A stretch of 63,533 bases of DNA, filler included, from Octopus bimaculoides (GCF_001194135.2; 5 parts of 5 records of this genome joined end to end with filler, not necessarily neighbours in it); one strand, 5' to 3'. Positions 7,380 to 29,852 are shown, counted from the first letter of the whole stretch. The notes: a model not told the origin generated them from the letters alone. Numbers and translations are program-made.

Positions 7380-12000
<4,621 letters not shown>

Positions 12001-12654
12001 ATGGCTCGGCCTGCTGGAAATAGCAGCGATATCGCTTAACGCATCGCACCTGCCTGCGTAGTCGTCGATATCTCTCTTAAAAGCCAAGATGGTCAATAGC
12101 TAAAATGCCACTGTTAAAATGTTGACCTTGGACTAAACTACATCAATAGCGACCAGAACAACAGCTACAATTTAAAGAATGTGAGTTGCGACAAGGAAAG
12201 CGAAAATTGAGAACTCAGAGAAAGTTTGAAAACCTTTATTTGAATAATAGATTGACATATTTAAATAATAGATTGACATATTTAAATAATGGAATGACAT
12301 AATAATAAATGTTTAGCATTCAATGTAATAGATGTATTATTTTCCCGTGATATCGAAATATAATGAATGTGTATGTTTATGGCAATATTATCCCTAACTG
12401 TAATGCATTTCTTAGTATCCCTACGAGTAAAACTAGTATTGTTATACCTAAAGGTACTTTCTAAGTTATCTTTTCAATGTTTCCAATGAAGGTTGCATCA
12501 ACGGGGATGCTTGATGTAAAAAGTCTCAACTAACAACAGGCTCGTTATCTCCGAAGACAAACTTTTCAAGTTAACACATTATGTTATACAAGCATATATA
12601 ACCATTTTCAAGCGCGCGCACACACACACACACGCACACACACGCGCACGCACG

Positions 12655-18790: not shown

Positions 18791-19635
18791 TATATAAGAA
18801 ATAAATTATACTCGGAAAGAGAGAAAGATAGTATCTGTCTACTTCGAGCCTAGTCTATCGCGAGACTCGGACTTACTTTCATTTCTAAGTGTTTAAACTG
18901 AAAATACAATCCTTCGCCTCCTCCCCACCTCGCGAACGAAACGCTATTCCATCATAGAGTTTACGCCCCTAGCACAAGTGCTGGATCGAGAAAAAGCTAC
19001 GGAGCTGTAAATCCTACTGGTGTCCGGTCCGGATGAGTTTTCCGGTACTGAGTCAAATTAAACCGCAGGCTTCACTCCAAATAATGCCCTTCCATCAATT
19101 CCTGTAAAATTTCTGTTTGCAACCATACTCACCACAGAAGCATTAATGGTTTCTTATGCAGGCTCCTTCCAGTGTCATCGAAGCGAACGCTGGCGGAGAG
19201 CCAGTCACCTCGTTTACAATTGAAACTACGAATGAATCTGATTGTCTTCGAACCTCGCAGTTTCGCTCTTGATCGAGGAAAAGGTATTTGTCAAATGACG
19301 ACGCTGTAGTACATCTTTTACAGTTGCATGTACTTGAGCAACTAGAAATAAACTGCCTTTCTTGAGAACCTCAAGCGCCGACCAGATCCTAAAATTTTAA
19401 CCACTGCACCTCGCACCTTGACAGGTGTTTGTGCATCTCAGGTAAGATACTCAGAAGATTGATAGCATCTCGGAACCCATTAAGCGAGCTGAAGCGCATA
19501 GATTAAAATGCTTTATTCTAATGCAAGCACTACTATAGATCAATCAGAATTACTAGATAAATTTAATTTAAATTGTTTCAAAACATAACGGATTGTAATA
19601 GAGAATAATCCAAATTGTAAATGCTGCTTATAAAT

Positions 19636-19737
<102 letters not shown>

Positions 19738-19837
19738 NNNNNNNNNNNNNNNNNNNNNNNNNNNNNNNNNNNNNNNNNNNNTTAATTAATTAANNNNNNN
19801 NNNNNNNNNNNNNNNNNNNNNNNNNNNNNNNNNNNNN

Positions 19838-20755
19838 CTTAACGAAATTAGTAGGCAATCAACAGTACTAAGTAACAAGAAGAAAACAAAATTACTGTGC
19901 AAATACAACATTACAGAAAAAGATTTACCTGAGGTAAAAGAAAAGCTAAAGCAAGATATCCTTGCCAAAGCACAAAGAACACGCCGGTATGAGAAACGCC
20001 AACGTTTCTTTGAGCAAAACAAACAGTTCAACTCCAACCACCAAAAATTCTACCAAGAACTTGGCAAAAATAAAATAGACATTACTGCAGCACCAACAGC
20101 AGAAGTGGAAGGATTTTGGAAAGAAACATGGTCGGTGACGGATCAACCTCAGAAAAGGACCATTAAAACAACGAACTCAGCACCTGAGCAACTCTACAGA
20201 CCTATAACCTGTCTCCCTGCAATCTACAAAGTCTTTACTTCAATAATATCGCAGAGATTGAGTAAGCACCTGGAAAATATCAACCTGTTTCCAGAAGAGC
20301 AGAAGGGATGCTGCAAGGGCTCATACGGCTGTAAAGATCAATTAATGATCAATAAAGCCATAACTGAAGACAGCCGCAGAAAGAAAGGCCTCAGTATGGC
20401 CTGGGTCGACTACCGAAAGGCTTTTGATAGTGTTCCCCACACGTGGATCCTCGAAACGCTTGCCATAAACAAGGTAGCACCAATAATTATAAAATACATA
20501 AGACACTATGAATAAATGGCAGACAGTGCTACAGCTCCAAACAAAAGAGGGACTCGTGAAAACCAAAGCCATCCCCATTAGCAGAGGAATATTCTAGGGA
20601 GACACGCTCTCTCCACTCCTGTTCTGCATGGTACTGACACCTTTTATCTGACATGCTAAACAGAACTGGATGCGGATACAAATGTTACGGCAAAACAATC
20701 AGTCACCCTTTATATATGGCTAACCTAAAACTATACGCTACAAGTGATAAACAGC
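19838..20755 (+). mobile_element. R4/Dong-clade non-LTR retrotransposon, reverse transcriptase fragment (dead)
   Basis: KAQRTRRYEKR..., YRPITCLPAIYKVFTSI, EEQKGC..GSYGCKDQL, AWVDYRKAFDSVPHTWI, RGIF*GDTLSPLLFC, HPLYMANLKLYA; internal deletion and stops. Confidence 0.92.
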
Positions 20756-21720
20756 CTTTGCAGCTTGCTTCCGTTTCCTGGCATGACGCTCCACTCTACC
20801 CAGCTTGCTGATCTTCTTACGAATATCACACAAGAGGATCTCAATCTCGACCTTGGAGGGGTCTTCTCGCAGTACTGCTCTTAACCTTCTTGCGTCTTTT
20901 CCAAGTTCACGGATAGCTCTTCACCTCCGGGACTCCTTCACCTGAACTGTAGGTCTTTCAGTCAGATCACGTACACCAAATTTCAGCACTCCATAATTAC
21001 TAATCAACTCTTCCAGCACTCGGACTTGCTTGCTTGGATCAACTTTGACCGTGCAGAAAGTCCTCGTTCATTGTAGATCATGCTTTATCAGAGGCACGAG
21101 GCCACTTGATCACTCGCCGGCCAGATGTAGGGGTCTGTGGGACTCTCTGATGTTCGTCCTGGTCCCAGCACTCCAACGACCTATTGGCATTCACCGAGCG
21201 ATTATCAGTTATGGGCTTCAAGCCACACTTCATCTTTGTTTGATGGAACTTCCTTCCTTTCACAGACTTGAAGACTCGCTACGTCCACCACACACCAACT
21301 AGTTTCCATCATAGCCATTATCCAATAAATCCGTCCTTATTGCAGATGTAGTTGTTGTAAGTCAAGAGGTTTTACATCCCCAGTGGACACATACTAGCCC
21401 AACGATGGGCCGGAAGATTACTTATTGGCCTGGGTTTGCCAGACTTGAGGCGGGTGCTATCTTCAAAAGGCTACAAAGAGCTATCCCACTGTCCCTGCAC
21501 AGGCAGGCCATTTTATAACGGTCATTTAGAACTGTTGCACGACCCGATGCTGCACAAGCGAAGACTCAAGGCGGGCAGCTCATTCCCTGCAGTCCGATTA
21601 CTGACGCCACCACCTTCTCACGGCTCTCACCGTCCTATCACAGTAGTCACCATCCTTTCATGGTTGTTACTGGAAAACGAGAGGTCGCAGTAGAAGAAAA
21701 CACCGAGTCCTCCATTTCTC
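20756..21720 (-). mobile_element. HERO-like (R2 superclade) non-LTR 5' fragment adjoining the R4 RT
   Basis: VKGRKFHQTKMKC (zinc-finger relic), GRRVIKWPRASDKA, SRR..AIRELGK and LCDIRKKISKLGRVE..RKRK resemble HERO ORF N-termini; frameshifted. The 5' part is uncertain. Confidence 0.6.
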
Positions 21721-22704
21721 NNNNNNNNNNNNNNNNNNNNNNNNNNNNNNNNNNNNNNNNNNNNNNNNNNNNNNNNNNNNNNNNNNNNNNNNNNNNNNNN
21801 NNNNNNNNNNNNNNNNNNNNNNNNNNNNNNNNNNNNNNNNNNNNNNNNNNNNNNNNNNNNNNNNNNNNNNNNNNNNNNNNNNNNNNNNNNNNNNNNNNNN
21901 NNNNNNNNNNNNNNNNNNNNNNNNNNNNNNNNNNNNNNNNNNNNNNNNNNNNNNNNNNNNNNNNNNNNNNNNNNNNNNNNNNNNNNNNNNNNNNNNNNNN
22001 NNNNNNNNNNNNNNNNNNNNNNNNNNNNNNNNNNNNNNNNNNNNNNNNNNNNNNNNNNNNNNNNNNNNNNNNNNNNNNNNNNNNNNNNNNNNNNNNNNNN
22101 NNNNNNNNNNNNNNNNNNNACACACACACACACACACACACATACACACACACACATATATATATATATATGTACATGTAGGTGTGTGTGTGTGTGTGTG
22201 TGTATATATTTCAACGAAACAAGAGTATCGAAGGTGATCGCTTCTATAGTACACCGGGTATATCAATATCAGTAAAAGCCAAGTCATTATTTAAGTCTCG
22301 ATCAATAACACTCGATCAATAACACTCAAATGAGGTTTGCCTCATAACAACGATGACAACAGTGAGAGACAACGCCTGTTGTCATATAACTCATCTCGTT
22401 AACTAATTCTTCACCATTGAAACACAATACTTATTTCATTTACATATCTCTTAACTTCACCAAATTCAATTAGCTAACCTTGATTAACTTAAACAGTCAT
22501 CGGCGGAGATCATCGGATGGGTTCCCTGTGAAGGCAGTAAAACTAAAGATATCATTTAATATCTATTGAAATCATACATTCGCAAGTAGTCCGCACGCAC
22601 ATGCACGTACGTACATTCATACATACATACATGAAATTTGCCAGCACTTAAGAAGAACATTCAGTAATTTTTTAAAATAAGATTTTTACCCATATTATTT
22701 TATT

Positions 22705-22912
22705 CTACTCTAGGCACAAGGCCCGGAATTTTGGGGAAGGGACCAGTAGATTAGATCGAATCCAGTACGCAACAGGTACTTAATTTATCAACATCGAACG
22801 GATGAAAAGCAAAGTCAACCTTGGCGGAATTTGAACTAAGAACGTAAAGAAAGACGAAATACCGCTAAGCATTTCGCCCACCATTCTAACGTTTCTGCCA
22901 GCTCGCCGCCTT
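22705..22912 (-). mobile_element. Family A SINE about 25 bp upstream of the GRL start codon
   Basis: Near-consensus copy ending in gccagctcgccgcc. Confidence 0.9.
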
Positions 22913-22935
22913 TTTTCCGATATAATTAAAGAAAA

Positions 22936-23958
22936 ATGGTGTCTTCGACTACAAATGAGAACAGAGGACATGCAAAAGAATGTAGTCTTTATGATTTTAT
23001 TCATTCCTTAAAACCACCAGATTACTTCCCTCTACGCCGCATAAAAATGACACGAAATATTTGGATTTCTCTTGGAATATNNNNNNNNNNNNNNNNNNNN
23101 NNNNNNNNNNNNNNNNNNNNNNNNNNNNNNNNNNNNNNNNNNNNNNNNNNNNNNNNNNNNNNNNNNNNNNNNNNNNNNNNNNNNNNNNNNNNNNNNNNNN
23201 NNNNNNNNNNNNNNNNNNNNNNNNNNNNNNNNNNNNNNNNNNNNNNNNNNNNNNNNNNNNNNNNNNNNNNNNNNNNNNNNNNNNNNNNNNNNNNNNNNNN
23301 NNNNNNNNNNNNNNNNNNNNNNNNNNNNNNNNNNNNNNNNNNNNNNNNNNNNNNNNNNNNNNNNNNNNNNNNNNNNNNNNNNNNNNNNNNNNNNNNNNNN
23401 NNNNNNNNNNNNNNNNNNNNNNNNNNNNNNNNNNNNNNNNNNNNNNNNNNNNNNNNNNNNNNNNNNNTAGATTTTCTGCAGATCTTCCCTTTCCCAGCGA
23501 AAGGCTCAGACTACCTTTTCCTACCAATTCTAATAACAACTTATATGCTGACCGTATCACTTATTTTAATGCGTTATAACGAGAATATAGTCCCTGTTTT
23601 CCTTATGGAGATCGTGAAAAAAGAGTTCGATGAACTTAATGAAAGCTTTCCGAAATATATGTTCGATATAAAACATGGAAAATCTATAAATAAATTCAAA
23701 GCTAAAAGTCGTTTGATAGCCGAGATATCACAAAAACATCGAATACTTTGTAAACTGCTCGAACTGTGCAGTGATAAATTTCAACTCCAGTTAGCAACAA
23801 TCATATTCTATATCCCATGCGGCATTTTTTGTACGATATACGGAACACTGAATAAACTACTAAACTATGATGAGATAATTTTTATGGTATGTTTCTTGCT
23901 TGGAAGCACATGTGCAATGCTCAGGTATTTTCATGAAGGCATATTACTGTATAACAAG
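22936..23958 (+). CDS. Gustatory-receptor-like (GRL / 7tm_7, 7TM ion channel superfamily) protein, first coding exon (341 codons including ~129 in the gap); final TM7 exon not located
   Basis: 163 stop-free codons after the gap. TM4 (YLFLPILITTYMLTVSLILM), a long IL2 with F..LN..F and EISQKHRILCKLLELCSDKF, TM5 (LATIIFYIPCGIFCTIYG) and TM6 (IIFMVCFLLGSTCAML..F.EGILLYNK) are present. Canonical phase-0 donor AAG|GTAAGT at 23958/23959; AAAAATGG start context. Confidence 0.75.
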
Positions 23959-24189
23959 GTAAGTAAATTCTTACATATTTATCATTGTCAGCAATTCAAC
24001 TCAAACCAAGATGGAGAAACGCATTCATTTCTTCACTATTGGTCATACCACTTTGTCACGTGTGAAGTAGTGTATTATTTTCACTAGAACACCTCCCATT
24101 TTAGATTTTTTTTTGTTTGGGAAGCAAGTAATTTTATCTTACTTTATTCACGTCTTCTCCCATTATAGCGTTTTTTTGCAACGTATTAC

Positions 24190-25780
24190 TTTAATTTCTT
24201 TTTGGCGTCTATTTGTAGGCACTCTGTGTTCTTTTTCCTTTCACTTGTACGCGTGGGTTCAAGTGAATCTCCGAGAAAATTATTCCTCCATTTAGTTTTA
24301 AAAACACTTCTTTTGCCATGGTAATGGATAGTTTTGTTCGGGTAAACAGTGATTTTATCCAATTGAAAAGTCCGTATACACTCTTAGTTTATTTATTTAT
24401 TTATTTATTTATTTTCTTTGTACAGACTTTTGCAGTTGCCCAGTCTGAATGGTTGTCTATTTAAATTATAGCTAGACTTTCTAGTCTCTCATGCTCTTTA
24501 TTGATTTAGTTCATCGCCGCAAATAGCACATTATGTTTGAGCCTAAAAACAGGGGTTAGCTTTTCTTTTACTCCGATCCTCGCTTTCGTTTTAGTGCAAC
24601 AGCCTAATCCTTCCAAAAAAGACATTTGGAAACAATCTTTCCTTTCTTGTCTCAGTTCGACTTCATCCGAAATTTTAACCGTACCAACAATATTTTCACA
24701 AGAAACACCAATGGGGGTATTCCATATCTTAAATAGGTTTAGTGATGTTTTTCAACACACAGGATTGTCCTTTTCGTTTCACCTCGAAACATTACGTTGA
24801 TAATACATTCACCGATGCAATATAATTTCTTTCTTGTAACACCATATACTACTTAATTTGATTTCAATAATTTCGCCTTTCCGTTTTGTCACCTTGTTTC
24901 TTCATTTATGATAGTGATGTTACTACTCGTGTCTAATTGCATTTTGATACTAATGATTTCGATTTTCACCTTGATGAATATTCTGTTAGTTCTTAAACTT
25001 TTTTCTCAAATGACAAACTATTTATTTTTTCTCGTTAGGACCATTTTTTGTCAACTTAGTTCTTCATTGCAATTTAACGTCTCCTGTGTTCCCGCAACGA
25101 AAGCATTTCGCTTTTTTCAACGGACACTCTTTTCTCAGGTGCCTACCACCACATGCCATACATGGCTCTATCTCTTGATATATATCGTGTCTTTCGCGAA
25201 TCCTTTTATCCACCTTCACAATTGTTCGAACTGATTTGATCTGCAAACAGTCTCTGCGTTGGGTTTCTTCCTTGTTGTGCCTTACTTTTAGTATCCTATC
25301 GCACTCCTCTGACAGTTTCTGAAGGCTTATATTCTGTTCTATTCACAGCTCTGCGAGAATCTTATCACTCTCACTACCGCGTCCTTTCTAGCAGTAAGAC
25401 CCCCCAGTGAGCACTACACGGTAGAACGAGTCTGGAGTTAGTTTATCAGTTTAAGTCTCTCGCACTCTCTGTTCACTCTACCTGCATATGTAGTAAAGTC
25501 TTCGCTATCGCTCTTCTCAGTGATCAAACACTTCCAACGGGTGCTGAACCTCGATGTATTTTCACTAAAATATCAATTGTGTCCGTAAGATTTCTATCAG
25601 AAACTTTTTTAGGCAATATACGGTTACATTATTTCTCATGCTCTGTCGTCGCCGGTTTCCATAGAATTAGACGCGTTTTCATTTCTAACATTGGGTCTGG
25701 GCATTTCCCCCCCAAAATTGTTGAAATCTTCAGTAATAAGCCTCAAAAGAGATTCCTTCTTCCGGGTCATATTTAACTTC
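24190..25780 (-). mobile_element. Ty3/Gypsy (K02A2.6-like) gag-pro-RT relic, antisense in the GRL intron
   Basis: KYDPEEGISFEAYY, TRWKCL...EDFTTYAGRVNRECE, zinc knuckles CMACGGRHLRKECP and CFRCGNTG, GLGCCTKTKA..PVFR, SDWATA, KEVFLKLNGGIIFSEI; many stops and frameshifts. Confidence 0.88.
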
Positions 25781-26571
25781 ATGTATTGAATTTGCTACGT
25801 GGTCTGGCGAAAACGTGTTTTCCAGTTTTGTTATTGAGTTCATTATTTGTAGTATTTACTGCTGTAACATTTGTTTTTATTGCTGTTGTTGCAACTCAAA
25901 TATATGATTGTTTGTATGCATGTAGATGTGTATGCATTTAGGCATGTATGTATGTATATATGTATGTATGCATTTAGGCATGTATGTGTGTATATATGTA
26001 TGTATGTATCTGTGTGTCTGTGTTTGTCCCACCACCATCTCTTGACAACCCTGATGTTGATGTGTTTACCTCACCGTAAAATAAGTATTTCGGCAAAACG
26101 GAACCAAGAGATTAGGTACCCAGATTTCAAAAGAATATAAGTGCTGGCATTGATTCACTTGACTAAAAATTCAAGGCCTCAGCATGGCGGTAGTCTCAAA
26201 GCCGAACCAGGTAAAAGAATAAAAGTATATATATATATATATATATATATATATNNNNNNNNNNNNNNNNNNNNNNNNNNNNNNNNNNNNNNNNNNNNTT
26301 AATTAATTAANNNNNNNNNNNNNNNNNNNNNNNNNNNNNNNNNNNNNNNNNNNNTATATATGTATGTATGCATGTATCCATATATGCATACATACACTCA
26401 TACATTCTTACATGCATAATCCATGAAAGGATACGTAGATACTTATATGCATGCATACATACTTACTATACACTTATCTACAAACACACACTAATATCTG
26501 GGGGTCTTAAAATATACGCTGCATACACAATTCTACACACACATACACACCATGAAACACAAACATATATA

Positions 26572-28287: not shown

Positions 28288-29852
28288 TTATAAATGAGAA
28301 GATAAAATAGAGCTTACATCCATATAGTTCTTTTTTAGTCACCATAGTGTTGCACAGGTTTTAAAATTTTTAAACCATCTAAATTTTATTAAGCTGGAGC
28401 GGATCTTTTCTATTTGGCTGCCAATTTTCAATCTCTTCAATTTCTGTTCGAATTGATTTCATATCCGGTATAATGATGTAGTTTTGTATGCTAATAAATG
28501 CTTTGATATTCATTTTCGCCATAAATCAACAAATAAAGAGTTAATAGCTTTTAAAGTTTATAAATTCTACCAGTATTTCATTTGTTTACAGTTGATACCA
28601 CGTGCTGTCACGCACAAAATGACAGCTTCCAAATCCTGTTTTCTGACTGAGTGAAAATTTAAACTTTAAACTTCTATAACTTTTTTTTTTTTAATTTCTG
28701 GAAAAGTGAAATATCTCTGGAGNNNNNNNNNNNNNNNNNNNNNNNNNNNNNNNNNNNNNNNNNNNNNNNNNNNNNNNNNNNNNNNNNNNNNNNNNNNNNN
28801 NNNNNNNNNNNNNNNNNNNNNNNNNNNNNNNNATACTCACGCATAACATACACGTCGCTGTGATAGAAGAAACGAAATTCAAGCCCGAAATAGGACGGTC
28901 CAATAGGACGGGTGTCTAAGGAAAATGGTAATGTAAATTGCATAATTTCTTTTGAAATTGTATTCTCTCTAAAGCGTTATCTTCTTTAAATCGTGTAAAG
29001 CTCTCATAGACTGTACTGATAGTAAATCTCACAGAAACCATCGTTGAAAACAATAGTCTTTCTAATACATTTGTCACTTCCTCTATTTGGAGAGTTGTTA
29101 TTTATTATTTCTACATTATGCCAAGGAGTAATCTCGTTTAAATTAGGACGAAGTCGAAAATTATCAGTAATATTCTTTTCTACGCTAGACACAAGACCCG
29201 AAATTTTGATGGGGTGGAGCCAGTCGATTAGATCGACCCAGTACGCAACTGGTACTGAATTTATCGACCCCCGAAAGGATGAAAGGCAAAGTCGACCTCG
29301 GCGGATATAATCAGTAATATTACTTACTGTGTAAGGTCTGAGTAAGTCTTAATATACTAAATTGCATTTTTATTTTCATAACAAAGAAAAATGTACATCA
29401 CTGGACTTGAATTTACAGTAGCTTCCCTACCAAGCTGTGGGTTTGAAAGAAATTCTTAATTTCAGTATTCATCAATCAGTTATTTTATGAATAATATTAA
29501 CATAAATATATCGTGAATATATAATATCTTTTATTTCCTTCCATAGTTTATCAGTCTGTTGTCTTGCGAATTATGTAAATGTTATGTGTATAATAGATTA
29601 TGTCTTTAATTTTCTTCCGTAGTGATATCATTCTATGTAATAAACTGCTTGTTTTTTAAATCATTCTCAAATTTCTATTTTTTTTTTTTTTTATGGAAAC
29701 TGTTTCTGATTTCAGTCCTCATAATCTGGTTATCTCTATTTCCAGATATTTAAATTAAAATTTTCATTTCTATCCTATGTTGAAACTGATAATTCGATTA
29801 CGAATCATTTCATTTCTTGCGTTTTTTGACAACAATATGACATATAAGCCTT

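What the first reader, a model, noticed from the sequence alone, without database searches (positions are those of the whole stretch)
22936..23958. Gustatory-receptor-like 7TM ion channel gene in a probable octopus genome
Seen: a 341-codon first exon with three hydrophobic helices, a long amphipathic loop (F..LN..F ... I.QKH..LC.LL....KF) and a canonical phase-0 donor right after the third helix. Established: this spacing and the H..L..L IL2 motif characterise TM4-TM6 of insect GRs/ORs and invertebrate GRLs, which are ligand-gated ion channels. The known octopus chemotactile receptors are a different, nAChR-derived family. Inference: a divergent GRL could be a separate, little-studied chemosensory channel in cephalopods.
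Basis: partly seen in the sequence, partly recalled or inferred. Interest (0 to 1): 0.85.

Follow-up and report, generated by a model that had tools for sequence, protein, structure and literature searches.

The report
Octopus gustatory-receptor-like gene first exon
This is a real but gap-broken first exon of an unannotated octopus relative of the insect taste-receptor ion channels. It is one of several near-identical first exons lined up in front of one shared gene tail, the same layout as in some insect taste-receptor genes, and it belongs to a known family whose function in octopus is untested.

Summary
The piece is 100% identical to Octopus bimaculoides chromosome CM046608.1. The ORF at 22936-23958 is the long first exon of a gustatory-receptor-like (GRL, Pfam 7tm_7) gene. 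Only 48 + 163 of its "341 codons" are real; 387 bases are N.

The gap-free O. vulgaris locus has the same exon as an uninterrupted 332-333-codon ORF. Both window flanks fall in one frame there, and about 363 nt (TM1-TM3) would lie in the gap. The readable part encodes TM4, the long IL2 loop with the H..LC.LL motif, TM5 and TM6, and ends at a conserved phase-0 GTAAGT donor.

Family membership rests on:
- hhalign of the window peptide against other mollusc GRLs (95%, E 4e-8);
- Pfam 7tm_7 above threshold in the tandem paralogue;
- a profile hit to Drosophila Gr64a;
- an AlphaFold model whose top 20 PDB matches are all insect Orco/OR/GR channels;
- three phase-0 3' introns.

New here: the exon is one unit of a 5-7 kb tandem array of first exons upstream of one shared set of TM7 exons, as in insect Gr28b/Gr39a. 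Another octopus GRL gene and an abalone GRL gene have the same layout.

Expression, splicing and any chemosensory role are untested, and GRLs in molluscs are already known. I rate it a new member of a known kind, of moderate interest.

The parts
22936..23080 (+). Start of the first exon: ATG and 48 codons (plus one base). Encodes the cytoplasmic N-terminal tail up to the beginning of TM1 (MVSSTTNENRGHAKECSLYDFIHSLKPPDYFPLRRIKMTRNIWISLGI).
   Evidence: The ATG and frame align without indels to all four O. vulgaris copies (M[LV]YSTADGNKGHTKERSLYDFIHSLKPPDYFPLRRMKMTRNTWNSFGL). BLASTP of the last 13 residues to the N-terminus of P0021 gives E 0.001. An internal ATG at 23047 matches the start used by the O. 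vulgaris annotated model.
23081..23467 (.). Assembly gap of 387 N. Expected to hide about 363 nt of the same exon, encoding TM1, TM2, IL1 and TM3.
   Evidence: In O. vulgaris the homologous flanks are 365 nt apart and in the same frame within an open 332-333-codon exon. The same gap is present in the public assembly.
23470..23514 (+). Extracellular loop 2 (DFLQIFPFPAKGSDY). The coding frame continues upstream into the gap; the acceptor-like ttttctgcag at 23472-23481 is inside coding sequence.
   Evidence: The sequence is identical or near-identical in the O. vulgaris, O. sinensis and second O. bimaculoides copies, where the frame stays open upstream. This loop is poor in K/R.
23515..23571 (+). 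TM4 (LFLPILITTYMLTVSLILM)
   Evidence: Hydropathy peak of 2.17. Corresponds to AF2 helix 152-202 of P0021.
23572..23784 (+). Intracellular loop 2, 71 residues, amphipathic. Contains the conserved SQKHRILCKLLEL motif at 23728-23766.
   Evidence: The RxxHxxLCxLL consensus and an invariant H are seen across mollusc GRLs. It aligns to Gr64a EHYVKMCELLEF. hhalign to the GRL profile covers this loop. The loop has 13 K/R.
23785..23841 (+). TM5 (LQLATIIFYIPCGIFCTIY)
   Evidence: Hydropathy peak, hhalign alignment and AF2 helix 207-262 of P0021.
23842..23874 (+). Extracellular loop 3 (GTLNKLLNYDE)
   Evidence: Short acidic loop without K/R in the orthologue. Contains the invariant G of the 'LYG' column.
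23875..23931 (+). TM6 (IIFMVCFLLGSTCAMLRYF)
   Evidence: Hydropathy peak of 1.89 and AF2 helix 268-308 of P0021.
23932..23958 (+). Start of intracellular loop 3 (HEGILLYNK); last codons of exon 1.
   Evidence: Conserved in every copy and species examined.
23959..23964 (+). Phase-0 splice donor GTAAGT.
   Evidence: AAG|GTAAGT. The same donor follows LYNK in the four O. vulgaris copies and in the second O. bimaculoides copy.
23965..26254 (+). Intron and spacer of the tandem unit, reaching the edge of the piece. The exons for IL3 and TM7 are not in the window.
   Evidence: tblastn of P0001 finds no downstream exon in the piece. The shared exons lie at L001 12206, 13523 and 14588, beyond a 2935-N gap and a second exon-1 copy. 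Window 24382-25202 recurs at 92% identity after the next copy.
22703..22913 (+). SINE-like interspersed repeat directly upstream of the ATG, part of the duplicated unit (putative promoter/5'UTR region).
   Evidence: About 82% identical copies lie in reverse orientation in introns of the neighbouring copy. The same element precedes every O. vulgaris exon-1 copy.

Best explanation
Window 22936-23958 is the long first exon, broken by an assembly gap, of an unannotated gustatory-receptor-like (GRL; insect GR/OR superfamily, 7TMIC) transcript unit on Octopus bimaculoides chromosome CM046608.1.

Shown:
- The readable parts encode the N-terminal tail and EL2-TM4-IL2-TM5-EL3-TM6 of a GRL, ending at a conserved phase-0 donor.
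- The exon is one unit of a tandem array with a 5-7 kb period. There are at least 2 units in O. bimaculoides and at least 4-5 in O. vulgaris.
- The array lies upstream of a single set of three short phase-0 exons that encode IL3 and the pore-lining TM7.

Inferred:
- Each unit carries its own promoter. Transcription from one unit is followed by splicing of its donor to the first shared acceptor, and downstream first exons are removed as intron. This is the way insect Gr28b/Gr39a-type genes make isoforms.
- The roughly 435-residue product inserts with its N-terminus inside and C-terminus outside, and assembles into a tetrameric ligand-gated cation channel like Orco, Gr43a and Gr64a.

What gates it, and in which cells it is made, is unknown. 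A chemosensory role is the leading guess but is not supported by any data here.
For: - Identity of the locus.
- Direct homology of the window peptide to mollusc GRLs outside its own orthogroup: hhalign 95%, E 4e-8.
- The tandem paralogue P0001 (92% aa identity) passes the Pfam 7tm_7 gathering score, with weaker Trehalose_recp and 7tm_6 hits.
- An exhaustive HMMER profile search gave 18 hits, all GRL-type, and their Pfam 7tm_7 scores reach 112 bits.
- The family profile hits Gr64a at E 9e-7 over nearly its full length, Orco at 0.019 and MhOR5 at 0.08.
- The AF2 model of O. vulgaris P0021 has pTM 0.64. Its top 20 Foldseek PDB hits are all insect Orco/OR/GR (probability 1.0, TM about 0.5), then the E-value drops to 0.37.
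- The K/R distribution and C-tail glycosylation sequons fit an N-in/C-out topology.
- Gene structure: a long first exon plus three phase-0 3' introns, which Robertson et al. 2018 (PMC6175461) give as ancestral for GR/GRL genes.
- Array: four intact exon-1 copies followed by one set of exons 2-4 in O. vulgaris, with units 97-100% identical.
- The O. vulgaris model P0021 joins copy 2 to the shared exons across copies 3 and 4.
- The paralogous gene LOC118764606 has two first exons only 43% identical. Annotated proteins from two species (P0003, P0004) each use one of them with the same shared exons.
- Abalone 'gustatory receptor 28b' has the same layout.
- dN/dS against O. vulgaris is 0.60, with a binomial p of 0.043 for being below 1.
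Against: - The window fragment alone has no Pfam hit.
- Full-length P0021 also fails Pfam 7tm_7 at E<1, so the Pfam evidence is marginal and depends on which protein is scanned.
- TM1-3 are unread, and TM7 lies outside the window. TM7 is shared with, or possibly belongs only to, the last exon-1 copy.
- No transcript data were available, so use of this particular exon is not shown.
- The units are so similar (dS 0.03-0.04 within a species) that intact frames could persist by chance. Between the two O. bimaculoides copies dN/dS is about 0.8 on 16 differences.
- In O. sinensis one copy carries three 1-nt indels and the copy next to the shared exons is 5'-truncated at a SINE. Members of the array do decay, or that assembly has errors.
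- The TM7 motif is only partly kept: SYAILAYQT against TYhhhhhQF.
Confidence: 0.85

Rival explanations
1. Orphan exon. The exon is a recent partial (5'-only) tandem duplicate that is not transcribed or not spliced to the shared exons. On this reading it is a young pseudo-exon that still looks intact, and only the copy nearest the shared exons makes protein.
For: - Units are 96-100% identical within a species, so open frames need no selection.
- dN/dS between the two O. bimaculoides copies is about 0.8.
- RefSeq annotates only the downstream copy, LOC128248504, and no database protein contains the window's exon.
- Two O. sinensis copies look damaged.
Against: - The ATG, frame and GTAAGT donor are conserved in every O. 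vulgaris copy and between species that differ by dS of about 0.17. The exon is more conserved (90%) than its flanks (80-84%), and dN/dS is 0.6.
- The O. vulgaris model uses an internal copy of the array.
- Diverged alternative first exons in the paralogous octopus gene and in abalone show the layout is maintained over long times.
- In O. sinensis it is the copy next to the shared exons that is truncated.
Confidence: 0.3
2. Assembly chimaera. The pre-gap and post-gap pieces come from different units of the array, or the two O. bimaculoides copies are an artefact of mis-assembled repeats, so the 'exon' as laid out does not exist as one molecule.
For: - The region is full of gaps: 8 N runs in 24.7 kb, including a 2935-N gap between the copies.
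- Units are about 96% alike, which is hard for short-read scaffolding.
- The N count (387) differs from the expected 363.
Against: - The gap-free O. vulgaris assembly has the same order and orientation in every unit, with 365 nt between the flanks.
- The two O. bimaculoides copies differ by about 4% in DNA and 12 amino acids, more than allelic variation would give.
- Even if the flanks come from two units, each would still be part of a GRL first exon.
Confidence: 0.12
3. Chance ORF or another kind of membrane protein, for example a transporter, given the weak Pfam SDF hit.
For: Pfam on the fragment alone gives only sub-threshold hits: SDF at 13.5 bits and DUF818 at 11.8 bits.
Against: All homology, structure and gene-structure tests point to GR/GRL. 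The SDF hit is far below its cut-off of 27.9 bits.
Confidence: 0.01

Closest known systems
Insect alternatively spliced gustatory receptor genes (Drosophila Gr28b, Gr39a, Gr23a; many cockroach GR/OR genes)
   Same: - Same protein superfamily.
[quoted passage not shown] The description is in PMC6175461; the octopus data are.
   Different: - The first exons of this octopus gene are nearly identical (93-100% aa within a species), so they would add little receptor diversity.
- Splicing is not demonstrated.
- Sequence identity to insect GRs is only about 11-15%.
- The last residue of the TM7 motif is T, not F.
Mollusc GRLs, e.g. Haliotis cracherodii 'putative gustatory receptor 28b' (P0022), Argopecten irradians XP_069122622 (P0012), Solemya velum KAL5017310 (P0005)
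   Same: - Recovered by the profile at E 1e-6 to 1e-9, with strong 7tm_7 hits.
- Same four-exon plan.
- The abalone gene also has several long first exons before the shared exons.
   Different: About 17-26% identity. The scallop gene has a single first exon.
Octopus paralogues LOC118764606 / A0A0L8FL56 ('Gustatory receptor', UniProt) and LOC118764607
   Same: - Same family and same chromosome in O. sinensis.
- Same four-exon plan with alternative first exons.
   Different: Only about 23-26% identical to the window's gene. Their alternative first exons have diverged to 43% identity.
Solved insect 7TM ion channels: Orco (6C70), MhOR5 (7LIC), Gr43a (8JM9), Gr64a (8JME), BmGr9 (8UVT)
   Same: The predicted fold of the O. 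vulgaris relative matches these and nothing else. The sequence profile reaches Gr64a, Orco and MhOR5.
   Different: - The model has only moderate confidence (pLDDT 68, with the N-terminal half about 50).
- TM-score is about 0.5.
- Tetramer formation, pore and ligand pocket were not examined.
Octopus chemotactile receptors (CRs)
   Same: Both would be ionotropic receptors encoded in the octopus genome.
   Different: CRs are Cys-loop, nAChR-derived pentamers (PMC11526382, PMC12635824). This protein has no Cys-loop domain and has the GR fold. CRs number up to 26 in O. bimaculoides. The GRL family found here is small: three loci in O. sinensis.

Membership tests
GR/GRL family (Pfam 7tm_7; insect chemoreceptor superfamily, 7TMIC) | Significant sequence-profile match to the family | tested here: met
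   - The window peptide against a profile of mollusc GRLs gives hhalign 95%, E 4e-8.
- The tandem paralogue scores 28.4 bits on 7tm_7 against a cut-off of 26.6.
- The family profile reaches Gr64a at E 9e-7.
- Caveat: the window fragment alone and full-length P0021 give no Pfam 7tm_7 hit.
GR/GRL family | Seven transmembrane helices with intracellular N-terminus and extracellular C-terminus | tested here: inconclusive
   - The window shows only TM4-TM6. TM1-3 are in the gap and TM7 is outside the piece.
- In the O. vulgaris relative, AF2 gives seven long helices plus one short IL3 helix.
- K/R counts are 9/7/13/5 in the N-tail and the three intracellular loops, against 1 (EL2), 0 (EL3) and 3 (C-tail). 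Two N-x-S/T sequons lie in the C-tail.
- This is consistent with the expected topology, but it is prediction only.
GR/GRL family | TM7 motif TYhhhhhQF | tested here: inconclusive
   - Shared exon 4 (L001 14588, outside the window) reads SYAILAYQT: Y and Q are kept, T becomes S, and F becomes T.
- Y and Q are invariant in the mollusc alignment.
- Partial motifs are accepted for some GRLs in PMC7746228.
GR/GRL family | [quoted passage not shown] | tested here: met
   - Intron 1 follows LYNK (window 23958|GTAAGT).
- Intron 2 follows AKME, and intron 3 follows VLG.
- All three are phase 0 in O. bimaculoides, O. vulgaris and O. sinensis.
- The family criterion comes from PMC6175461 and PMC7746228.
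- Positional homology with insect introns was not checked residue by residue.
GR/GRL family | Fold of Orco/OR/GR subunits | tested here: met
   The top 20 Foldseek PDB hits are all Orco/OR/Gr43a/Gr64a/BmGr9, with probability 1.0 and TM 0.40-0.53. The next hit has E 0.37. The model is of the O. vulgaris relative, not of the window protein, and has pLDDT 68.
GR/GRL family | Forms a tetrameric ligand-gated cation channel | not testable with these tools
   Needs expression, electrophysiology or cryo-EM.
Gr28b/Gr39a-type alternatively spliced chemoreceptor genes | Tandemly arrayed long first exons upstream of one shared set of C-terminal exons | tested here: met
   - O. vulgaris has exon-1 copies at L002 4881, 10001, 16097 and 23095, then exons 2-4 once at 29129, 30750 and 32184. 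A fifth unit is implied upstream.
- O. bimaculoides has the window copy plus the copy ending at L001 10390, then exons at 12206, 13523 and 14588.
Gr28b/Gr39a-type alternatively spliced chemoreceptor genes | Each first exon is intact, with its own start codon and donor | tested here: inconclusive
   - Met for all four O. vulgaris copies.
- The readable parts of the window copy are intact, but 363 nt are unread.
- Two O. sinensis copies are frameshifted or truncated.
Gr28b/Gr39a-type alternatively spliced chemoreceptor genes | Transcripts that join each first exon to the shared exons | not testable with these tools
   Only annotation models are available. P0021 joins copy 2 across copies 3 and 4. 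P0003 and P0004 use different first exons of the paralogous gene. No RNA data could be examined.
Octopus chemotactile receptors (Cys-loop / nAChR-like) | Cys-loop ligand-binding domain plus four-helix channel domain | tested here: not met
   No Neur_chan domains were found in the window peptide, P0001 or P0021. The fold matches GR/OR only.

The most novel reading that the evidence does not exclude
Octopus, and more widely mollusc, GRL genes are built as arrays of variable first exons spliced to constant TM7 exons. That architecture is so far described for arthropod GR/OR genes, which would make it either ancestral to protostome GRs or repeatedly evolved. The octopus array would be transcribed in sensory tissue, giving cephalopods a second ionotropic chemoreceptor family beside the nAChR-derived chemotactile receptors.
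Probability: 0.3. Interest if true: 0.65.

Novelty: new member of a known kind. Interest (0 to 1): 0.4.

Why it matters
Work on cephalopod chemosensation centres on the chemotactile receptors and GPCRs. None of the papers I could search describes cephalopod GRLs, although database entries exist. This locus shows three things:
- Octopuses keep a small GRL family.
- At least one transcript unit is missing from the O. bimaculoides annotation because of assembly gaps.
- The first-exon-array layout known from insect Gr28b/Gr39a also occurs in cephalopod and gastropod GRL genes. This bears on how old that way of diversifying receptors is.

It also gives concrete targets (the exon junction and the full-length ORF) for expression and channel assays. 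The family is known and no function is shown, so the gain is incremental.

Tried and rejected
- Pfam on the window fragments alone gave no family hit, only sub-threshold SDF and DUF818. Full-length P0021 also gave no 7tm_7 hit.
- A word-indexed search with the 48-aa pre-gap peptide found nothing. The link to the N-terminus came from the cluster member P0021 instead.
- The acceptor-like ttttctgcag just after the gap was considered as an exon start. I rejected it because the frame and sequence continue upstream in every homologous copy.
- The downstream exons (IL3, TM7) were searched for in the piece and are absent.
- MAFFT misplaced the 48-aa peptide, so I used pairwise BLASTP.
- A crude hydropathy scan split TM1/TM2 into three peaks and misplaced TM7. 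I used the AF2 helices for numbering.
- P0020's first exon is an out-of-frame piece of exon-1 copy 2, probably an annotation artefact and not evidence of another promoter.
- The P0009 locus could not be fetched.
- Rfam 'miRNA' hits at 22118-22214 and 25940-26020 are microsatellite palindromes below the gathering scores. No tRNA was found.
- The literature searches found no paper on cephalopod GRLs. Robertson 2015 and Allard 2023 are not held.
- The CCHC-like ORF at 25064-25246 (minus strand) gave no Pfam hit.

Full report
**What is in the window**

The piece 19838-26254 is 100% identical, gaps included, to Octopus bimaculoides assembly GCA_001194135.2, chromosome CM046608.1, at about 5,813,758-5,820,174.

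The ORF listed at 22936-24087 consists of three parts:
- 48 real codons at 22936-23080;
- 387 N at 23081-23467;
- 163 real codons at 23470-23958, followed by AAG|GTAAGT.

The '341-codon exon' is therefore 211 read codons plus a gap whose length is only estimated.

**Continuity across the gap**

Continuity cannot be read in this assembly, so I tested it on relatives.
- A search with the post-gap peptide found one protein, P0001 (O. bimaculoides LOC128248504, 92% identical).
- Its cluster relatives include a 399-aa O. vulgaris protein, P0021, which UniRef names 'Gustatory receptor'.
- P0021 starts MKMTRNTWNSFGL, which matches the last residues before the window's gap, IKMTRNIWISLGL-type sequence IKMTRNIWISLGI (E 0.001).
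- P0021 has DFLQIFPFPAK at residue 136, which is the first sequence after the gap.

In the gap-free O. vulgaris locus (L002) the exon is one open frame of 332-333 codons. The window's two flanks align to it without indels and in the same frame, and they are 365 nt apart there. The in-frame ATG at window 22936 is conserved at the same position in all four O. vulgaris copies. The following 35 codons are conserved too, with SLYDFIHSLKPPDYFPLRR identical.

The acceptor-like ttttctgcag just after the gap lies inside coding sequence in all copies. The gap most likely hides about 363 nt encoding TM1-TM3. One caveat remains: the units of this locus are about 96% alike, so the scaffold could have joined flanks from two different units.

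**What family it belongs to**

The fragment alone has no Pfam hit. Several independent tests nevertheless agree.
- The window's 163-aa peptide aligns to a profile of mollusc GRLs that excludes its own orthogroup. hhalign gives 95% probability and E 4e-8, and maps residues 45-162 to IL2-TM6.
- The tandem paralogue P0001 passes the Pfam 7tm_7 gathering score (28.4 against 26.6 bits, model positions 206-361 of 370). It also has weaker Trehalose_recp and 7tm_6 hits.
- An exhaustive HMMER profile search of 1.8 billion representatives returned 18 proteins. Those whose source was looked up (10 of the 18) come from Octopus, Haliotis, Solemya, Argopecten and a tardigrade, plus one unnamed Logan contig, and those scanned score up to 112 bits on 7tm_7.
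- A profile of the family hits Drosophila Gr64a at E 9e-7 over nearly its full length, Orco at 0.019 and MhOR5 at 0.08.
- An AlphaFold2 model of P0021 (pLDDT 68, pTM 0.64) has seven long helices. Its top 20 Foldseek matches in the PDB are all insect Orco, OR, Gr43a, Gr64a or BmGr9 chains (probability 1.0, TM 0.40-0.53). The E-value then jumps to 0.37.
- Basic residues concentrate in the N-tail, IL1, IL2 and IL3. EL2 and EL3 have almost none, and the C-tail carries two N-x-S/T sequons. This fits the inverted N-in/C-out topology.

Its H..LC.LL motif (23728-23766) is the most conserved part of IL2 in mollusc GRLs and aligns to Gr64a EHYVKMCELLEF.

No Cys-loop domain is present, so this is not a chemotactile receptor.

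Two weak points remain. Full-length P0021 does not reach Pfam 7tm_7. The TM7 motif in the shared last exon is only partly canonical: SYAILAYQT.

**Gene structure and surroundings**

The paralogue's gene has four exons. They are the long first exon, then SHGIL...AKME, then LTFF...VLG, then IFGTVVSYAILAYQ... to the stop. All three introns are phase 0 in three Octopus species. Robertson et al. 2018 give this pattern, a long first exon plus three phase-0 3' introns, as ancestral for insect chemoreceptors and present throughout animal GRLs (PMC6175461; PMC7746228).

The window itself contains none of the three short exons. Instead, the exon is one unit of a tandem array.
- In O. bimaculoides a second exon-1 copy lies 5.7 kb downstream. 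It is 96% identical in DNA, and its 5' part is lost in a 2935-N gap. Exons 2-4 follow it.
- In O. vulgaris four intact exon-1 copies occur at 5.1-7.0 kb spacing, in units 97-100% identical, each with the conserved ATG and GTAAGT donor. A single set of exons 2-4 follows them. A fifth unit begins upstream of the fetched locus.
- The O. vulgaris gene model P0021 joins copy 2 to the shared exons, across copies 3 and 4.
- A second octopus GRL gene (LOC118764606, L004) has two first exons only 43% identical before one set of short exons. Annotated proteins from O. sinensis (P0003) and O. bimaculoides (P0004) each use a different one.
- The abalone gene named 'putative gustatory receptor 28b' has at least three long first exons, at 61% and 30% identity to the annotated one, before its shared exons. 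A scallop GRL has a single one.

**How it most likely works**

Shown:
- the sequence features and their conservation;
- the array layout.

Inferred:
- Each unit, including the SINE-like element directly upstream of the ATG (22703-22913, conserved in every unit), provides a promoter.
- The transcript is spliced from the phase-0 donor at 23958 to the first shared acceptor, and downstream first exons are removed as intron.
- The roughly 435-residue protein forms a tetrameric cation channel like Orco and the GRs.

The ligand and the tissue are unknown. Non-arthropod GRLs have developmental, light-related and motor roles as well as possible chemosensory ones (PMC7746228), so 'chemosensory' is a guess.

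**Is the exon functional or decaying?**

- Between O. bimaculoides and O. vulgaris, dS is 0.17 and dN/dS is 0.60 (binomial p 0.043). The exon is 90% identical, against 80-84% for the flanks. This is weak purifying selection, as is usual for chemoreceptors.
- Within a species the copies differ too little to judge: dS 0.03-0.04, and dN/dS about 0.8 between the two O. bimaculoides copies.
- In O. sinensis one copy has three single-base indels, and the copy next to the shared exons is truncated at a SINE-like sequence. That is either decay or assembly error.

The main rival, that this unit is a young orphan duplicate that is not used, therefore keeps about 0.3.

**Novelty**

GRLs are known in Mollusca (Robertson 2015 and Eyun 2017, as cited in PMC7746228). 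Octopus relatives are already in RefSeq and UniProt, two of them auto-named 'Gustatory receptor'.

None of the papers I could search describes cephalopod GRLs or first-exon arrays outside arthropods. Robertson 2015 could not be read, so I cannot claim priority for the array observation.

The window's exon itself is unannotated, since no database protein contains it.

Noticed in passing
window 19838-20515 (+): Fragment of a non-LTR retrotransposon reverse transcriptase (Pfam RVT_1, 41-43 bits). It is open from the edge of the piece to a stop at 20513-20515, with stops and frame breaks afterwards. It has no counterpart in the O. vulgaris locus, so it is probably a lineage-specific insertion between array units.
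   Followed up: partly
window 20516-21720: A stretch with higher G+C (48% against 34-40% elsewhere) and several 60-110-codon open frames, none of which I scanned against Pfam. It ends at a 399-N gap and has no match in the O. vulgaris locus. Probably degraded mobile-element sequence, but unexplained.
   Followed up: partly
window 22703-22913 (+); L001 13271-13060 and 12485-12306 (-); before every exon-1 copy in L002: A SINE-like interspersed repeat of about 210 nt sits 22 nt upstream of the GRL start codon and is conserved there in every unit and in both species. Inverted copies lie in the introns between the shared exons. A similar sequence abuts the truncated exon-1 copy in O. sinensis (L003, about 9300-9432).
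   Followed up: partly
window 22120-22214 and 25900-26020, 26230-26254: Compound microsatellites, (CA)n(TA)n(TG)n and (TGTA)-like repeats, flank the gaps. They give palindromic 'miRNA' hits in Rfam, all below the gathering scores, so these are low-complexity artefacts.
   Followed up: yes
window 25064-25246 (-), within 24824-25900: A 60-codon ORF with a CCHC zinc-knuckle-like pattern (CMACGGRHLRKEC...CFRCGNTG) but no Pfam hit. It lies in a segment of about 1.1 kb that is present in the window and in one O. vulgaris unit (L002 25001-26482) but missing from the other units. Likely a retroelement gag remnant inserted in the spacer.
   Followed up: partly
L004 (O. sinensis CM016866.1, 83.05-83.10 Mb), 23267-24277: The second alternative first exon of LOC118764606 ends with a GC donor (AAT|GCAAGT) instead of GT. 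Even so, the O. bimaculoides protein A0A0L8FL56 uses the orthologous exon with the shared exons.
   Followed up: no
L005 (Haliotis cracherodii JAJLRC010000007.1), 19594-19851: Three short tandem partial repeats of the last (TM7) exon lie just downstream of the abalone GRL gene's stop codon.
   Followed up: no
L006 (Argopecten irradians CM084267.1), 22483-22690: The scallop GRL gene lies about 10 kb upstream of an ionotropic glutamate receptor-type gene (Pfam Lig_chan, Lig_chan-Glu_bd).
   Followed up: no
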